DNA of 63,640 bases, the filler included, from Octopus bimaculoides (taxonomy: Eukaryota): assembly GCF_001194135.2 (NCBI RefSeq). It is 5 parts of 4 records of this genome, joined end to end, with 100 filler letters (N's around TTAATTAATTAA, not from the genome) between each part and the next. Parts side by side here need not be neighbours in the genome. Positions count along the whole stretch, not along the records: positions 1 to 15,979 come from NC_069004.1; 4 more parts are not named here. One strand, given 5' to 3'. A model generated the notes under the pieces. It ran no database searches. It was not told the origin of the DNA and saw only the letters and a list, made by a program, of their open reading frames with translations. The stretch's first letter is position 1. Every line of letters starts with the position of its first letter. Positions 3,370 through 13,380 of the stretch are shown one piece after another. The translations under genes were made by a program, and so were the position numbers.

Positions 3370-3985
3370 ATGTCGGAAATGATGACGGTGTTGCAAAGTG
3401 GGAGGAGAAGCACAGGAGGGAAGGTTAACACGGATGATGATGATGGCGATGGTGAGTGCAATGAAAGTGGCGACGGATGCTGCTGCTGCTGATGATGATG
3501 GTGATGAGGATGGTGATGATGGTGATGGTGATGATCATGTTGACGATGATGACAACGACAATGACAATGATGGTCTTGATAAGGATGATGATGATAGTGA
3601 TGATCATGATGGCGATGAGGACGGTGAAGTTGATGATCATCATAGGGATGATGATGATGATGATGATGACAATGAAGACGATGATAACGGTTAGAATAAC
3701 ATCGACCACAACGACGACGATGACGATGATGATGATGAAGATGTCGATGACGATGATGACGAAGGTAACGATGAGGATAATGATGATGATAAGGATTATG
3801 TTGATGATGACAGCTACGACGATGACGATGACGACAACACGGTGATGACGTCGAGGATGAGGATGACAATGATGATGATGATTATGACGTCGATGTTGAC
3901 AATGATAACGATGGCAATGATGATGATGATGACGAGGATGAAAAGGAGGAGGAAAAGGAAAAGGACGAAGATGATGATCCAATAT
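3370..3985. repeat. Degenerate (GAT/GAC)n trinucleotide low-complexity tract
   Basis: Direct reading; generates the Asp-, Met-, His- and Ile-rich ORFs in several frames. Confidence 0.9.
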
Positions 3986-7565: not shown

Positions 7566-8084
7566 NNNNNNNNNNNNNNNNNNNNNNNNNNNNNNNNNNN
7601 NNNNNNNNNNNNNNNNNNNNNNNNNNNNNNNNNNNNNNNNNNNNNNNNNNNNNNNNNNNNNNNNNNNNNNNNNNNNNNNNNNNNNNNNNNNNNNNNNNNN
7701 NNNNNNNNNNNNNNNNNNNNNNNNNNNNNNNNNNNNNNNNNNNNNNNNNNNNNNNNNNNNNNNNNNNNNNNNNNNNNNNNNNNNNNNNNNNNNNNNNNNN
7801 NNNNNNNNNNNNNNNNNNNNNNNNNNNNNNNNNNNNNNNNNNNNNNNNNNNNNNNNNNNNNNNNNNNNNNNNNNNNNNNNNNNNNNNNNNNNNNNNNNNN
7901 NNNNNNNNNNNNNNNNNNNNNNNNNNNNNNNNNNNNNNNNNNNNNNNNNNNNNNNNNNNNNNNNNNNNNNNNNNNTCTTTACATTATCTCAAGACTCCCA
8001 TTTTCATGTGGGTATTGCTTCTGTTTCTAACCCACCCATACTCAGTCGCACCTACCTGTATTTCCAGGTTATTTTATCATAATC

Positions 8085-8170
8085 CTCACCATCATTATTA
8101 TCAATATTGTTATTATTATTATTTATTATTATTATTATCACTATCATTACTATTATCACCATTGTTGTTG

Positions 8171-8234
<64 letters not shown>

Positions 8235-8250
8235 CATTATTATTATTATT
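8085..8250. repeat. (ATT)n/(GTT)n microsatellite
   Basis: Direct reading. Confidence 0.95.
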
Positions 8251-8338
8251 AACAAGCGTATTATTGTTTCTTTTCGCTTCTAAATTTTGCATTTTATTCA
8301 TGAAACTTTTTTTCGATGAACACTTTCATTAACAGTGT

Positions 8339-10041
8339 CATGACCAAAGAAAAAAAAGTACCGTCCACATATATGTATTCAAAGTTTTATTTCTGTACTC
8401 CAATACGTTGTCCCTTTCCATCCGTTCCCCGCCCCACCACTTTATCAACATCAAACCCTCCAAATCTCTGGATGTTGCTCATTTACAGCTTAAAAAAAAT
8501 TCATAAAGAACCAAAACAAATTTTATTCTTTTTACCCCAATATCTTGTCCCATTTTCCCCTCCATCAACATTACCATATTTTCTTATTTATAGCCAAGAA
8601 AAATATAAACACACATAACCAGAGATATATTTCTTATTCCAAACCGTTGTTCGATCCCCCTACTTTCTCTTTATCAGCATATCAGGGCTCCCGGCTTTGC
8701 CCATTGGTAGATAAAAAGAAGATAAAATGCGTGACTAGTTTAATTTTTACTCCAAAATGTTTTCCCATTTTTTCCCCGTTTTCTCAACATCAACAGTGAA
8801 GTGTAAAATTCTTTGCCCACTTATAATTAAAAAGAAGACGACACACGAGACAAAAGATTCCTTTTTACCCCAAAACGTTGCTCCATTTCTCAGTTCCTTT
8901 TGACCCTTTTTCTCATTCCTAAAAACTCATCATTATCCCTGCTATTCCTATTTATAGTTAAAAACAAGATAAACAAACATGGCCAAAGTTATATTCCTCA
9001 TTCCAAAATGTTGCCCCATTATCTTCCCTTTTCTTTACCTCAACATATCAAAGTTCCCGGCTTTTCCAGCCCCAAAACTCCGACCCATTTTTTTTCCTTT
9101 TTATCATCAACACATAAGAGTCACCATCTTTGCCCATTTATAGTTAAAAATGAAAACAACNNNNNNNNNNNNNNNNNNNNNNNNNNNNNNNNNNNNNNNN
9201 NNNNNNNNNNNNNNNNNNNNNNNNNNNNNNNNNNNNNNNNNNNNNNNCATGAACAAAGTTTTATTGCTCTTTCTAAAACGTTGTCCTATTTTGCCCTCTT
9301 TTCTCGGTATCAATGCATCAAAATCTCTTCCAAAACACCGTCTCGTTTTTCTATTTTCAACAAGTCTCCATTATGAATGGGTTTTCTCATTTATAACTAA
9401 AAGGAATTTAAGCACATAACAAAGTTTATTTCTCACTCCAAAATGTTGTCCCATTTTGCCCCTTTTAATCATTGACACGCAAGAATCTCTGCCTTTTCCC
9501 CACTGAAAGCTAAAAAGAATATGAACACACACGAGCAAAGATTAATTTCTCATTCCAAAACGTTGTCCCATTTTACCCCCTTTCTCAATATCAACACATC
9601 AGGAGCTCTAATTTTGCTCACTCCAAAGCACTGTCCCCTTTTCTTTCCCTTTCTCAACATCAATTCAACATTATTCACAGCTTTACTCATTTATAGCTAA
9701 AAACAATATAAAAACACATGAGCAAAGACGTATTTCATATTCCAAAACGTTGTCCCATTTTATCACCTTTTCTCGATATCAACACATCAGAAATTCTTCT
9801 AATTTTTCTCATTCCAAAACGCCGTCCCGCTTTTTTCTTTTTCAACATCAAATCACCATTATCTATGGTTTTTTTTTCTCATTTATAGCTAAAAATATTA
9901 TAAACACACATGACCTAAGGTTTATTTCTCATTCGAAAACGTTGTCCCATTTTTTCCCCCACCTTTTCTTAACATCAACCTATCAGTATCCCTGGCTTTG
10001 CTCGTTTATAGCTAAAAAGAAGATTACACACATGACCAAAG
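8339..10041 (-). repeat. Degenerate tandem array (~105-135 bp units plus half-units) whose first unit is the end of the CD225 CDS
   Basis: Recurring plus-strand block CATGACCAAAG-TTTATTTCTCATTCCAAAACGTTGTCCCATTTT...ATCAACA...CATTTATAGCTAAAAAGAATATAAACACA. Unit anchors lie near 10041, 9919, 9727, 9540, 9424, 9258, 8988, 8856, 8737, 8624, 8520 and 8384/8349. Confidence 0.9.
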
Positions 10042-10765
10042 CGGCTGTGGTAGCAATGCCGAGCAGACTGATGACCATCGATGTTCGTGAGTGACATTTG
10101 GCTTTCTTTTTCTTACCCTCCTTGAACGCCGATCCTGCCATTAATGAGAACATAGTAGCCAGCAGACCAAACGGCAGATTGAAACAGAAGAGCACAAAAA
10201 GGGAGAGCACCAGGTTAGTGTCACGAATTTCCGGTTCTCTGGAATTTTTGCGACCTTTCTTGGTGCTCACGTCCTTCGTCGGTTGGACGATGGTGACTTT
10301 GTAGTTTTTGTTTTTTGTAGTCTTCTTCTTCTTCTTTGATTTTTTATTATCACAGTCATTATTATTTTGGCCTACCCCTGCCATGTCGACACTAATGCCG
10401 GAAATACCACCAACGTTGTCGTCACTATCTTCACACCCACCACATCCGCCACCACCACTGCAACCACTGCAGCCACCACTGCCACCACCACCACCACCTC
10501 CTCCTCCTCCTCCTCCTCCACTTCCGCTTCCACCAGCACCTCCATCTCCGATTCTACCACTTCCTCCGCCCCCGCCGCATCCACCTCTCAGTTCACATTC
10601 CTCTCCGACACATTCCTCTCCACAGTCCGCAATCACTAAGTTACACTCGTAGTCGTCCGGAAGTAGCTTCTCACATTTATCATCCAATGGTATACTAGAA
10701 AAAGATATGACGTCATAATCGCTTTCTGACAATGGCTTTTTCTCTGGACTTAGTTCTTGATCCAT
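9983..10765 (-). CDS. CD225/dispanin-family membrane protein (SYNDIG1/PRRT1/TMEM91/TRARG1-like), 260 aa from the in-exon ATG
   Basis: Intact, GC-rich 260-codon ORF. The C-terminus RDTNLVLSLFVLFCFNLPFGLLATMFSLMAGSAFKEGKKKKAKCHSRTSMVISLLGIATTAALVMCVIFF fits the CD225 pattern (LSxF..C...PxG..A...S......G....A...S followed by a TM helix). There is a splice acceptor at 10808-10810 and AATAAA at 9921-9926. Confidence 0.88.
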   Translation of the reverse strand: MDQELSPEKKPLSESDYDVISFSSIPLDDKCEKLLPDDYECNLVIADCGEECVGEECELRGGCGGGGGSGRIGDGGAGGSGSGGGGGGGGGGGGGSGGCSGCSGGGGCGGCEDSDDNVGGISGISVDMAGVGQNNNDCDNKKSKKKKKTTKNKNYKVTIVQPTKDVSTKKGRKNSREPEIRDTNLVLSLFVLFCFNLPFGLLATMFSLMAGSAFKEGKKKKAKCHSRTSMVISLLGIATTAALVMCVIFFLAINEQSQGY

Positions 10766-11049
10766 CTTTGTCGAGATTCGAACCTGTGAAACCTTCTTTC
10801 ACCTCAACTGAAATTTAGAAAGCTAATGCATTCAACTCTTGCTGATGATAAAATAATCAGGTCTCTCTGGTTTATTACTGGTCTCTCTCTATAATCCATA
10901 TATGTATATATATATATGCATATAGCATATATTATCGCATCCGAACAATTAAACGTATTTTATACATCCGTGAAATGCAGACGGAAATAAAGAAGACCTA
11001 AATGAAAGGGCTAATATAAATACATACATAGGTACGTATTTATATTGAT

Positions 11050-11117
<68 letters not shown>

Positions 11118-11207
11118 TCTGTCTTTTTATAAATTCTCGTTATTAGCGTTTATGTTGCCAATATTCTTCATAAATTGCGATCTTCAAGCTTCACTTCTTT
11201 TCTTTAC

Positions 11208-11947: not shown

Positions 11948-12334
11948 GTGGAGGCGCAACAGCCCAGTGGTTAGGGCAGCGGACTCGCGGTCATAGGATC
12001 GCGGCTTCGATTCTCAGACCGGGCGTTGTGAGTGTGTATTGAGCGAAAACACCTAAAGCCCCACGAGGCTCCGGCAGGAGATGGTGGCGAACCCTGCTGT
12101 ACTCTTCCACCACAACTTTCTCTCACTCTTACTTCCTGTTCCTGTTGTGCCTGTAATTCAACGGGTCAGCCTTGTCACACTGTGTCACGCTGAATATCAC
12201 CAAGAACTACGTTAAGGGTACACGTGTCTGTGGAGTGCGCAGCCACTTGCACGTTAATTTCACGAGCAGGCTGTTCCGTTGATCGGATCAACTGGAACCC
12301 TCGACGTCGTAAGCGACGGAGTGCTAACAACAAC
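11948..12334 (+). mobile_element. Full-length tRNA-derived SINE (family C) with (AAC)n tail
   Basis: tRNA-like head with A/B boxes, body, and 3' end ...GACGGAGTGCTAACAACAAC. A close copy lies inverted at 34901-35280 and a 3' part at 22671-22824. Confidence 0.9.
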
Positions 12335-12625
12335 TCTGTATGTAACCTTAATTTCTATTGCTTTTATTGATCAAGAACATGATCAATCAATTGGAAATTC
12401 TCATTCCCTTTTCTCTCTATCGATCTATTATCTCATGCTTTCTCTAACTTCCTTTCTAAAGCTGCCGTGATAAAGGCCTTCATCTAAAGGAATTGTAATG
12501 TTCTCAAACATCGGTGACATAAAGGATCGTAGGAGCATCTTATGAAAATAATTAATCATTTACGGTTGAGTGCTTTATTGATTAACAGATCCCATGGTTA
12601 ATATGAAGAACATTGTGGCTCATTC

Positions 12626-12730: not shown

Positions 12731-12950
12731 TAAGGCGGTGAGCTGGCAGATTTGTTAGCTCTCTGGACGCAATGCTTAGCAGTATTTCGCCCGTCGCTAC
12801 GTTCTGAGTTCAAATTCCGTCGAGGTCAACTTTGCCTTTCATGCTTTCGGAGTCGATAAATTAAATACCAGTGATTCACTGGAGTCGATGTAATTGACTA
12901 GTCCTCTCACCTCAAATTTCAGGCCTTGAGCCTTTAGTAGAAAGAGGATT
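12731..12950 (+). mobile_element. SINE family A (head AAGGCGGYGAGCTGGCAGA..., B-box GAGTTCAAATTCC), flanked by (ATT)n
   Basis: Most abundant repeat in the window. Other approximate copies: + 14461-14690, 14710-14900, 16380-16590, 17228-17420, 22190-22340, 37090-37230, 37490-37670, 50745-50900; - 21340-21480, 21940-22150, 28295-28470, 37865-38075, 39550-39720, 54970-55100, 61985-62370. Confidence 0.85.
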
Positions 12951-12959
12951 GTTATTATT

Positions 12960-13052
12960 ATTATTATTATAAGTATTATTCAATAGTTTTATTTTTATAA
13001 CGTGCTTTCACTTCACTACCGAGCGCAGCTCTGTGTGCCTTGGTCAAAATAA
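12960..13052 (-). mobile_element. 3' UTR end of the same R4/Dong-type element as at 21-218, adjacent to (ATT)n
   Basis: ttcaatagttttatttttataacgtgctttcacttcactaccgagcgcagctctgtgtgccttgg is the near-exact reverse complement of about 137-200. Confidence 0.85.
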
Positions 13053-13241: not shown

Positions 13242-13380
13242 TCAAACCAGTTCTGACCGGGTTTTGAATCCACTGTAAAGATCAAATCAGTTCTGACTGG
13301 GTTTTGATTCTATTGTAAAGATCAAGCTAGTCCTGACTGTAAAGATCAAACCAGTTCATGACCAGGTTTCAATTCCTGTA
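13242..13380. repeat. 40-bp tandem repeat, ~3.5 copies
   Basis: TCAAACCAGTTCTGACCGGGTTTTGAATCCACTGTAAAGA at 13242-13281, a diverged copy at 13282-13321, a deleted copy at 13322-13345 and a partial copy at 13346-13380. Confidence 0.9.

What the first reader, a model, noticed from the sequence alone, without database searches (positions are those of the whole stretch)
8339..10041. A gene whose own C-terminus, stop codon and poly(A) signal are tandemly amplified about a dozen times
Seen: the array's first unit (10041-9920) is the CD225 gene's last 19 codons (LVMCVIFFLAINEQSQGY*) plus the 3' UTR through AATAAA. About 12 diverged units and several half-units follow. AATAAA persists at 9921, 9425, 9260, 8522 and 8386 (minus strand). 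Downstream of each signal lies the next unit's CTTTGGTCATGTGTGTTTATATTCTTTTT, a GU/U-rich tract like a cleavage downstream element. Each unit also holds TTCTTTTTAG, an acceptor-like site. The copies I checked are 1 nt longer than the CDS copy in the GTGTGT..TTCTTTTTAGC block. Inference: either the gene end was amplified into a ladder of alternative poly(A) sites and 3' ends, or a satellite unit was recruited to build the TM helix and stop.
Basis: partly seen in the sequence, partly recalled or inferred. Interest (0 to 1): 0.75.

Follow-up and report, generated by a model that had tools for sequence, protein, structure and literature searches.

The report
Old minisatellite copied from a gene's end
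In octopus, the last 18 codons, stop codon and first poly(A) signal of a small membrane-protein gene were copied head to tail about a dozen times just downstream of the gene, and the copies have since drifted like junk DNA, so this is an unusual origin for an ordinary repeat.

Summary
The window is Octopus bimaculoides chromosome CM046624.1. A single-exon CD225-family gene (10765-9983, minus strand, 260 aa) is followed by 12-13 full and 4-5 half units of about 120 nt (10041 to about 8339). Unit 1 is the gene's own last 18 codons, stop and proximal 3' UTR through AATAAA.

Direction of origin is settled. Argonauta hians and the cuttlefish Sepia pharaonis keep the same C-terminus (LVMCVIFFLAI[N/K]EQSQGY*) with no array. 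The coding copy is therefore ancestral, and the "recruited satellite" reading is refuted. Unit 10 still reads LVTHFIFFLSTNGQSREP* in the old frame.

The array is real and old. O. vulgaris has it unit for unit (88-97% identity between orthologous units, at most 84% between paralogues), with one extra unit.

It shows no constraint. Divergence between the two species is 8.0% in the array, against 7.3-10.1% in intergenic DNA and 4.4% in the CDS. The conserved motif cores diverge as fast as the rest.

The N gap lies deep in the non-coding array and corresponds to about 183 nt (one super-unit) in O. vulgaris.

A selected poly(A) ladder is unsupported but untested, because no transcript data were available. 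Modest interest.

The parts
9983..10765 (-). Single-exon CD225/dispanin-family gene, 260 aa; the stop codon TGA is at 9985-9983
   Evidence: ORF. Pfam CD225 above the gathering score. Orthologues in O. vulgaris, Argonauta and Sepia.
9920..10041 (-). Unit 1, the source copy: last 18 codons + stop + 57-nt proximal 3' UTR with AATAAA at 9926-9921
   Evidence: (HMM 1-115, E=8e-31).
9728..9919 (-). Unit 2, a super-unit A-B'-B (full unit 9919-9803 plus half unit 9802-9728). The Leu codon homologue is now TAG, there is a 1-nt insertion, and there is no AATAAA
   Evidence: Orthologue is V2 at 94%.
9541..9727 (-). Unit 3, a super-unit A-B'-B; its end reads AATTAA
   Evidence: Orthologue is V3 at 93%.
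9424..9540 (-). Unit 4 (A-B), with AATAAA at 9430-9425 and an exact TTCTTTTTAG
   Evidence: Orthologue is V4 at 91%.
9259..9423 (-). Unit 5, a super-unit A-B'-B, with AATAAA at 9265-9260
   Evidence: Orthologue is V5 at 92%.
9248..9258 (-). First 11 nt of unit 6 (CTTTGTTCATG), cut off by the gap
   Evidence: Matches the start of O. vulgaris unit V6.
9161..9247 (.). Assembly gap (87 N). The O. vulgaris counterpart is 183 nt, one super-unit
8988..9160 (-). Unit 7 (its start is lost in the gap) plus a half unit; its end reads AATATA
   Evidence: Orthologue is V7 at 93%.
8856..8987 (-). Unit 8, strongly diverged, with no poly(A) hexamer
   Evidence: Orthologue is V8 at 89%.
8738..8855 (-). Unit 9, without the 1-nt insertion; it has ATTAAA at 8744-8739, where O. 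vulgaris has AATAAA
8625..8737 (-). Unit 10, a fossil of the coding end. In the CDS frame it reads LVTHFIFFLSTNGQSREP*, with the stop at the homologous position
   Evidence: HMM E=2e-29.
8522..8624 (-). Unit 11, with AATAAA at 8527-8522
   Evidence: Orthologue is V11 at 94%.
8385..8521 (-). Unit 12, the last and most diverged unit, with AATAAA at 8391-8386. Its G-rich part and tail align weakly with the Argonauta 3' flank
8339..8384 (-). Array tail, ending in an exact copy of the unit's first 11 nt (CTTTGGTCATG, 8349-8339). This may be the distal duplication junction
   Evidence: only two exact copies in the window, at either end of the array. Conserved in O. vulgaris.

Best explanation
The array is a locus-specific, old and now decaying minisatellite. 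It arose by tandem duplication of the last ~120 bp of transcription-unit sequence of a CD225-family gene. Each unit covers half of the second hydrophobic helix, the stop codon, and the proximal 3' UTR up to and including the poly(A) signal.

**Shown**
- The coding copy is the ancestral one.
- The array is present in both Octopus species examined, O. bimaculoides and O. vulgaris. It is absent from Argonauta and Sepia.
- It was already complete, unit by unit, before O. bimaculoides and O. vulgaris split.
- Since then it has changed only by point substitutions at the neutral rate and by gain or loss of one or two units.

**Inferred**
- The first duplication was an unequal exchange or replication slippage between the CTTTGGTCATG(TGTGT) stretch inside the CDS and a similar stretch just past the poly(A) site.
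- Every duplicated segment starts inside the CDS but runs past the stop. The extra copies therefore lie downstream of an intact gene end, and the protein is unchanged.
- Later rounds added units. One subfamily carries a 1-nt insertion, and ~70-nt half units were added.
- The copies that still pair AATAAA with the next unit's GU-rich start are probably competent cryptic poly(A) sites for any read-through transcript. Nothing indicates that they are maintained by selection.
For: **Direction of origin**
- Argonauta hians has an identical C-terminus, with only (TGA)n downstream.
- Sepia pharaonis ends ...LVMCVIFFLAIKEQSQGY* and has a unique 3' flank.
- The unit HMM hits each outgroup once, at the CDS end only.

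**Fossil coding frames**
- Units 9 and 10 keep the CDS frame, and the other units are frameshifted.

**Real, not an assembly artefact**
- The independent O. vulgaris assembly carries the orthologous array.

**Old, with no homogenisation**
- Each unit's best match is its positional orthologue (88-97%). Paralogues reach at most 84% in pairwise alignment, or 48-81% over multiple-alignment columns.

**Neutral evolution**
- Divergence is 8.0% in the array, 7.3-10.1% in four intergenic blocks and 4.4% in the CDS.
- The B core diverges by 7.1%, the A core by 9.0% and the rest by 8.0%; Fisher p is about 0.6.

**Locus-specific as far as visible**
- There are no copies elsewhere in the 16 kb window, the 47 kb O. 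vulgaris locus or the 20 kb Argonauta locus.

**Junction signature**
- The exact 11-mer occurs only at the two ends of the array.
Against: - No transcript or 3'-end data could be reached, so real use of the downstream poly(A) signals is unknown.
- All five canonical AATAAA hexamers are conserved in O. vulgaris. Under 8% neutral divergence this has a probability of about 0.08 (my calculation), a weak hint of constraint.
- The terminal 11-mer is intact although other unit starts have decayed. Neutrality does not predict this.
- Only 83 kb of cephalopod sequence was searched for dispersed copies.
- Unit-to-CDS distances (20-40%) are large compared with the 8% species divergence. The array could therefore predate the Argonauta split and have been lost there.
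Confidence: 0.8

Rival explanations
1. Selected ladder of alternative poly(A) sites. The array is transcribed, and the repeated AATAAA + GU-rich junctions are maintained to give graded 3' UTR lengths or fail-safe termination.
For: - There are five canonical AATAAA, one ATTAAA and two AATATA hexamers, each followed by CA and a TGTGTGTTT-like tract.
- All five AATAAA are kept in O. vulgaris.
Against: - Most unit ends have lost the hexamer.
- The array diverges at the intergenic rate, and the motif cores diverge no more slowly than the spacers.
- Unit number differs between the species.
- The first signal lies 57 nt after the stop and is canonical.
Confidence: 0.1
2. A pre-existing satellite unit was recruited to supply the end of the second TM helix and the stop codon (exaptation).
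For: None beyond the shared sequence between the CDS end and the array.
Against: - Argonauta and Sepia have the same C-terminus, at both DNA and protein level, and no array.
- The CD225 Pfam match runs to residue 244, into the repeated part.
Confidence: 0.02
3. Assembly artefact: a collapsed or mis-joined repeat in a gap-rich short-read assembly.
For: - An N gap sits inside the array, and six N gaps lie within the piece.
Against: - The independent O. vulgaris chromosome assembly has the same units in the same order, with no gap.
- The units are 20-50% diverged from one another, so they assemble unambiguously.
Confidence: 0.01
4. Cassette of alternative 3'-terminal exons. Each unit's TTTTTAG acceptor would allow a different C-terminal tail.
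For: - Acceptor-like TTCTTTTTAG/TTGTTTTTAG is present in units 1-5.
- A GTGAGC donor after ...PTKD is used by the O. vulgaris gene model.
Against: - The motif is simply the inherited codons I-F-F-L-A.
- Splicing from the phase-0 donor to these acceptors reads L-stop at once (CTA TAA).
- Distal units have lost the AG.
- Indels between the species break every frame.
- The gene is a single ORF in four species.
Confidence: 0.02
5. Source of antisense or small RNAs that regulate the parent gene, by analogy with gene-derived repeat clusters that silence their source gene.
For: The array is gene-derived and tandem. There is no direct evidence.
Against: - Units are only 60-79% identical to the gene copy, too diverged for small-RNA targeting.
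- There is no constraint.
- No Rfam family matched apart from AT-microsatellite noise.
Confidence: 0.03

Closest known systems
Minisatellites / VNTRs in or next to 3' UTRs (for example the 40-bp VNTR in the human SLC6A3 3' UTR; from my own knowledge)
   Same: - Head-to-tail array of units tens to about 200 bp long at one locus downstream of a stop codon.
- Unit number differs between related genomes.
- Most plausibly generated by unequal exchange or slippage.
   Different: - The unit here starts inside the coding sequence and contains the stop codon and the poly(A) signal.
- The units are long (about 120 nt, with 70-nt half units).
- The array is ancient and no longer homogenised (48-81% identity between units).
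Partial or internal tandem duplications of gene segments (for example FLT3-ITD type events; from my own knowledge)
   Same: Tandem duplication with one breakpoint inside an exon, probably mediated by microhomology.
   Different: - The duplicated segment runs past the stop codon, so the protein is unchanged and the copies are non-coding.
- It was amplified to about 13 copies.
- It is fixed and shared by the two Octopus species examined, not somatic.
D4Z4 macrosatellite with DUX4, where use of a poly(A) signal at the array edge decides expression (reviewed in PMC9334676, listed)
   Same: A tandem array derived from gene sequence, in which the position of poly(A) signals relative to the units matters for what can be expressed.
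   Different: - D4Z4 units are 3.3 kb and each holds a whole ORF, while the poly(A) signal lies outside the array.
- Here each unit holds only the last 18 codons and carries its own poly(A) signal, and the intact gene sits at the proximal edge.
Satellite DNAs seeded by short tandem arrays inside transposable elements (PMC12692304, section 4.1)
   Same: A short internal segment of a transcribed element becomes a tandem array.
   Different: - The source here is a conserved host gene, not a transposable element.
- No dispersal was seen, and there is no concerted evolution.

Membership tests
Minisatellite (locus-specific tandem array) | Head-to-tail copies of a unit of about 10 to a few hundred bp | tested here: met
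   15 HMM matches in one orientation, contiguous, with a period of 103-192 nt.
Minisatellite (locus-specific tandem array) | Confined to one locus rather than dispersed | tested here: inconclusive
   No copy outside the array in 16 kb + 47 kb + 20 kb of sequence. No whole Octopus genome could be searched.
Minisatellite (locus-specific tandem array) | Copy number changes between genomes | tested here: met
   O. vulgaris has an extra unit VX. It is 90% identical to V2 and 92% to W2. It may also have one more super-unit at the window's gap.
Classical satellite DNA | Concerted evolution: units within a species more alike than orthologous units between species | tested here: not met
   Every unit is closest to its positional orthologue (88-97%) and at most 84% identical to any paralogue.
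Classical satellite DNA | Long arrays, high genomic abundance | not testable with these tools
   The array is only about 1.7-2.0 kb here. Genome-wide abundance cannot be measured.
Tandem alternative polyadenylation sites | Several AAUAAA-type hexamers, each with a downstream GU/U-rich element, on the gene strand | tested here: met
   Five AATAAA, one ATTAAA and two AATATA at unit ends, each followed by a (C)ATGTGTGTTT-like unit start.
Tandem alternative polyadenylation sites | Cleavage and polyadenylation observed at more than one site | not testable with these tools
   No transcript data were available. Exact-protein look-ups returned only the genome record.
Tandem alternative polyadenylation sites | Signals conserved above the neutral background | tested here: not met
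   The B core, including the hexamer, diverges by 7.1% against 8.0% for spacers (p = 0.65). The array as a whole matches the intergenic rate.
CD225 / dispanin protein family (the gene itself) | Pfam PF04505 match above the gathering score | tested here: met
   35.3 bits against a cut-off of 27.1, residues 182-244. 110 relatives at E <= 1e-3.
CD225 / dispanin protein family (the gene itself) | Two hydrophobic segments separated by a conserved basic loop | tested here: met
   Read directly from the sequence: LVLSLFVLFCFNLPFGLLATMFSL, then the loop AGSAFKEGKKKKAKCHSR, then MVISLLGIATTAALVMCVIFFLAI. No topology prediction was run.

The most novel reading that the evidence does not exclude
The array lies inside long 3' UTR isoforms of the CD225 gene. 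The five AATAAA + GU-rich junctions shared by O. bimaculoides and O. vulgaris would then work as a regulated ladder of poly(A) sites. Alternatively they would act as a fail-safe terminator or as repeated protein or microRNA binding modules. On this reading a gene built its own 3'-end regulatory cassette by copying its terminus.
Probability: 0.08. Interest if true: 0.7.

Novelty: new member of a known kind. Interest (0 to 1): 0.28.

Why it matters
It is a clean, datable example of how a minisatellite can be born from a gene's own terminus without harming the gene. The duplicated segment spans the stop codon, so every extra copy lands in non-coding territory. It also shows how such an array then freezes and decays.

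There is a practical side for annotation. The repeat carries pseudo-coding frames, acceptor-like sites and poly(A) signals that can mislead gene models. The O. vulgaris model at this locus skips the CD225 domain altogether. The O. bimaculoides assembly has a gap inside the array.

If the poly(A) sites turned out to be used in a regulated way, it would be an unusual route to alternative 3' ends. Present evidence favours neutrality.

Tried and rejected
1. **N-terminal homologue search.** The search with the N-terminal 63 aa found nothing. A cleaner CD225-only query found only Argonauta again. No further octopod loci could be obtained that way.
3. **Spurious array ORFs as handles.** Look-ups of two spurious ORFs inside the array, as handles for transcript contigs, found nothing.
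4. **Logan contigs for the Sepia orthologue.** They end in microsatellites and repeats and say nothing about poly(A) sites.
5. **Rfam scan of 7976-11200.** It gave only sub-threshold microRNA-like hits on an (AT)n tract.
6. **Literature searches.** Searches for octopus 3'-UTR repeats or for repeats carrying poly(A) signals gave no direct precedent.
7. **Argonauta flank alignment.** The Argonauta flank beyond its (TGA)n tract aligns best to the last unit plus tail. Scores were 52-58 against 37 ± 6 for shuffles, with 2-6 of 500 shuffles reaching the observed score. The sequence is G-rich, so I treat this as suggestive only.
8. **Alternative terminal exon idea.** Rejected, because the phase-0 donor joined to the unit acceptor gives an immediate stop.

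Full report
**Source and gene**

The piece is identical over all 15,979 bases to Octopus bimaculoides GCA_001194135.2, chromosome CM046624.1, including the 87-N gap. On the minus strand, a single ORF at 10765-9983 encodes a 260-aa protein. It has a long Gly/Cys-rich low-complexity middle and a C-terminal CD225 (dispanin) domain. The Pfam PF04505 match is E=1.3e-8, 35.3 bits against a cut-off of 27.1. A full HMMER scan of 1.84 billion representatives found 110 relatives at E <= 1e-3, and two of them are close.

**The observation**

Reading the minus strand from 10041, the sequence CTTTGGTCATGTGTG...TTTTTAGCTATAAA.GAG...GATGTTGA...AAAATGGGACAACGTTTTGGAATGAGAAATAAA recurs head to tail.

- A profile built from four clean units finds 15 significant matches between 10040 and 8386, all on the gene strand, with E from 1e-5 to 1e-31.
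- These are eleven full or nearly full units and four ~70-nt half units. The half units repeat only the stop-codon-to-AATAAA part, which gives 165-192-nt super-units.
- An 11-nt unit start sits at 9258-9248, at the edge of the gap.
- TRF reports only the youngest part, with period 192. The repeat finder gives 13 copies of the 42-nt core.
- Unit 1 (10041-9920) is the gene's last 18 codons, the TGA stop, and 57 nt of 3' UTR ending in AATAAAC.

Two details need correcting.

- TTCTTTTTAG is exact only in units 1 and 4. The AG survives only in the first five units.
- The 1-nt insertion relative to the CDS copy is present in units 2, 3, 4 and 11 but not in units 9 and 10.

**The gap**

The N run at 9161-9247 lies about 740 nt beyond the stop codon, so no reading frame depends on it.

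- The left flank stops at unit position 11, and the right flank resumes at about position 16-18.
- In O. vulgaris the two flanks are separated by 183 nt (L002 11333-11515). That interval is exactly one A-B'-B super-unit, V6 plus its half unit, and it has no counterpart in the window.
- The gap therefore hides either about 5 nt or about 185 nt. The nominal 87 fits neither.
- The array has 12 or 13 full units accordingly.

**Which came first**

The orthologue in Argonauta hians ends ...AALVMCVIFFLAINEQSQGY*, identical to Octopus. It was annotated as a 114-aa partial protein, but a complete 331-aa ORF exists at L001 9350-10345. It is followed not by the array but by about 1 kb of (TGA)n.

The cuttlefish Sepia (Acanthosepion) pharaonis orthologue ends ...AALVMCVIFFLAIKEQSQGY* and has a unique, non-repetitive 3' flank.

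A profile of all units hits each of these loci exactly once, at the CDS end. The coding copy is therefore ancestral in coleoid cephalopods, and the array derives from it.

The units also carry fossils of the reading frame. Unit 10 translates in the old frame as LVTHFIFFLSTNGQSREP*, with the stop at the homologous place. Unit 9 reads FVSCVVFFLIISGQ.... Units with the 1-nt insertion show ...FLAINE... in a shifted frame.

**Age and reality**

The O. vulgaris chromosome assembly (L002) has an intact 260-aa ORF with the same C-terminus at 9623-10405. It is followed by 13 full and 6 half units. Two independent assemblies agree, so an artefact is excluded.

- Every window unit is most similar to the O. 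vulgaris unit at the same rank (88-97%). No paralogue exceeds about 84% in pairwise alignment, and paralogues are 48-81% identical over multiple-alignment columns.
- There has been no concerted evolution since the species split.
- O. vulgaris has one extra super-unit, VX, a copy of unit 2.
- The units are 60-79% identical to the CDS copy, and the tree is star-like with the CDS copy on the shortest branch. This is expected if only that copy is held by selection.
- By neutral distance the amplification is several-fold older than the split between the two species.
- Whether it followed the Argonauta split, or preceded it and was lost in Argonauta, cannot be decided with four species.

**Constraint**

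| Region compared between the two Octopus species | Substitution divergence |
|---|---|
| Array, 1,471 aligned sites | 8.0% |
| Four intergenic blocks of the same window | 7.3-10.1% |
| 5' flank | 6.0% |
| CDS | 4.4% |
| B core (ATGGGACAACGTTTTGGAATGAGAAATAAA) | 7.1% |
| A core | 9.0% |
| Spacers between the cores | 8.0% |

The first four rows come and the last three. The A and B cores are the most recognisable parts of the unit, yet neither differs significantly from the spacers (Fisher p about 0.6).

All five AATAAA are conserved in O. vulgaris. At 8% divergence this has a probability of roughly 0.08 by chance (my calculation). Most unit ends have already lost the hexamer. The array therefore behaves as neutral DNA.

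**Mechanism**

The exact 11-mer CTTTGGTCATG occurs only twice in the window, at the first base of unit 1 and just after the last unit (8349-8339). It is conserved at both places in O. vulgaris.

I read this as the signature of the tandem duplication junction, and possibly of the microhomology that seeded it. This is an inference. Its perfect preservation is not explained.

Each duplicated segment runs past the stop codon and the poly(A) signal. Amplification therefore left the protein and the proximal mRNA end untouched, which is probably why it was tolerated.

Each B-end/A-start junction recreates AATAAA, then about 10 nt, then CA-TGTGTGTTT. Read-through transcripts may well be cleaved there. 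No transcript data could be reached.

**Comparison and verdict**

The feature meets the definition of a minisatellite by unit size, tandem order and copy-number change. It fails the concerted-evolution criterion of classical satellites. It meets only the sequence-level criterion for tandem poly(A) sites.

Its unusual point is its origin: a unit that begins inside a transmembrane helix codon run and contains the stop and the poly(A) signal. I found no direct precedent in the searched literature. The mechanisms involved are ordinary.

I rate it a new member of a known kind with modest interest. A small residual probability remains that the poly(A) ladder is functional.

Noticed in passing
L002 10001-37208 (O. 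vulgaris OX597837.1), against the intact ORF at L002 9623-10405: The public O. vulgaris gene model (P0002, 133 aa) starts at an internal Met and uses the GTGAGC donor after ...PTKD. It then joins exons 15-27 kb downstream, and the rest of the product is low-complexity. It skips the CD225 domain and treats the array as an intron, although an intact 260-aa ORF is present. This is probably a chimeric mis-annotation.
   Followed up: partly
window 10380-10580 (-), residues about 62-130 of the protein: The middle of the protein is a Gly/Cys/Ser-rich low-complexity tract encoded by GGN/TGC microsatellite-like DNA. It differs by an indel from O. vulgaris. In Argonauta (331 aa) and Sepia (250 aa) its length and sequence are quite different.
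   Followed up: partly
L001 10356-11359 (Argonauta hians): About 1 kb of degenerate (TGA)n begins 10 nt after the stop codon of the Argonauta orthologue. It appears to have grown out of the GTTGATG motif, which Octopus also has right after its stop. A similar 450-bp (TGA)n lies in the window at 3490-3941.
   Followed up: no
window 8339-8349 and 10031-10041 (-): The exact 11-mer CTTTGGTCATG brackets the whole array and is intact at both ends in both Octopus species, while internal unit starts carry mismatches. Its perfect preservation at the distal end is unexplained.
   Followed up: partly
window 8094-8265: A long (AAT)n/(ATT)n microsatellite lies immediately distal to the array and is present at the same place in O. 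vulgaris (L002 about 12390-12620).
   Followed up: no
window 11968-12136 and 12802-12998: Short segments match second places in the O. vulgaris locus (L002 19007-19180 and 23362-23552) at 77-84% identity. They are probably dispersed repeats or transposon fragments unrelated to the array.
   Followed up: no
window 13242-13339: A 40-nt tandem repeat, 2.5 copies, 84% matches. Not examined.
   Followed up: no
L004 8575-9150 (Sepia pharaonis): A 26-nt tandem repeat of 22 copies lies about 1.8 kb downstream of the Sepia orthologue. It is unrelated in sequence to the Octopus unit.
   Followed up: no
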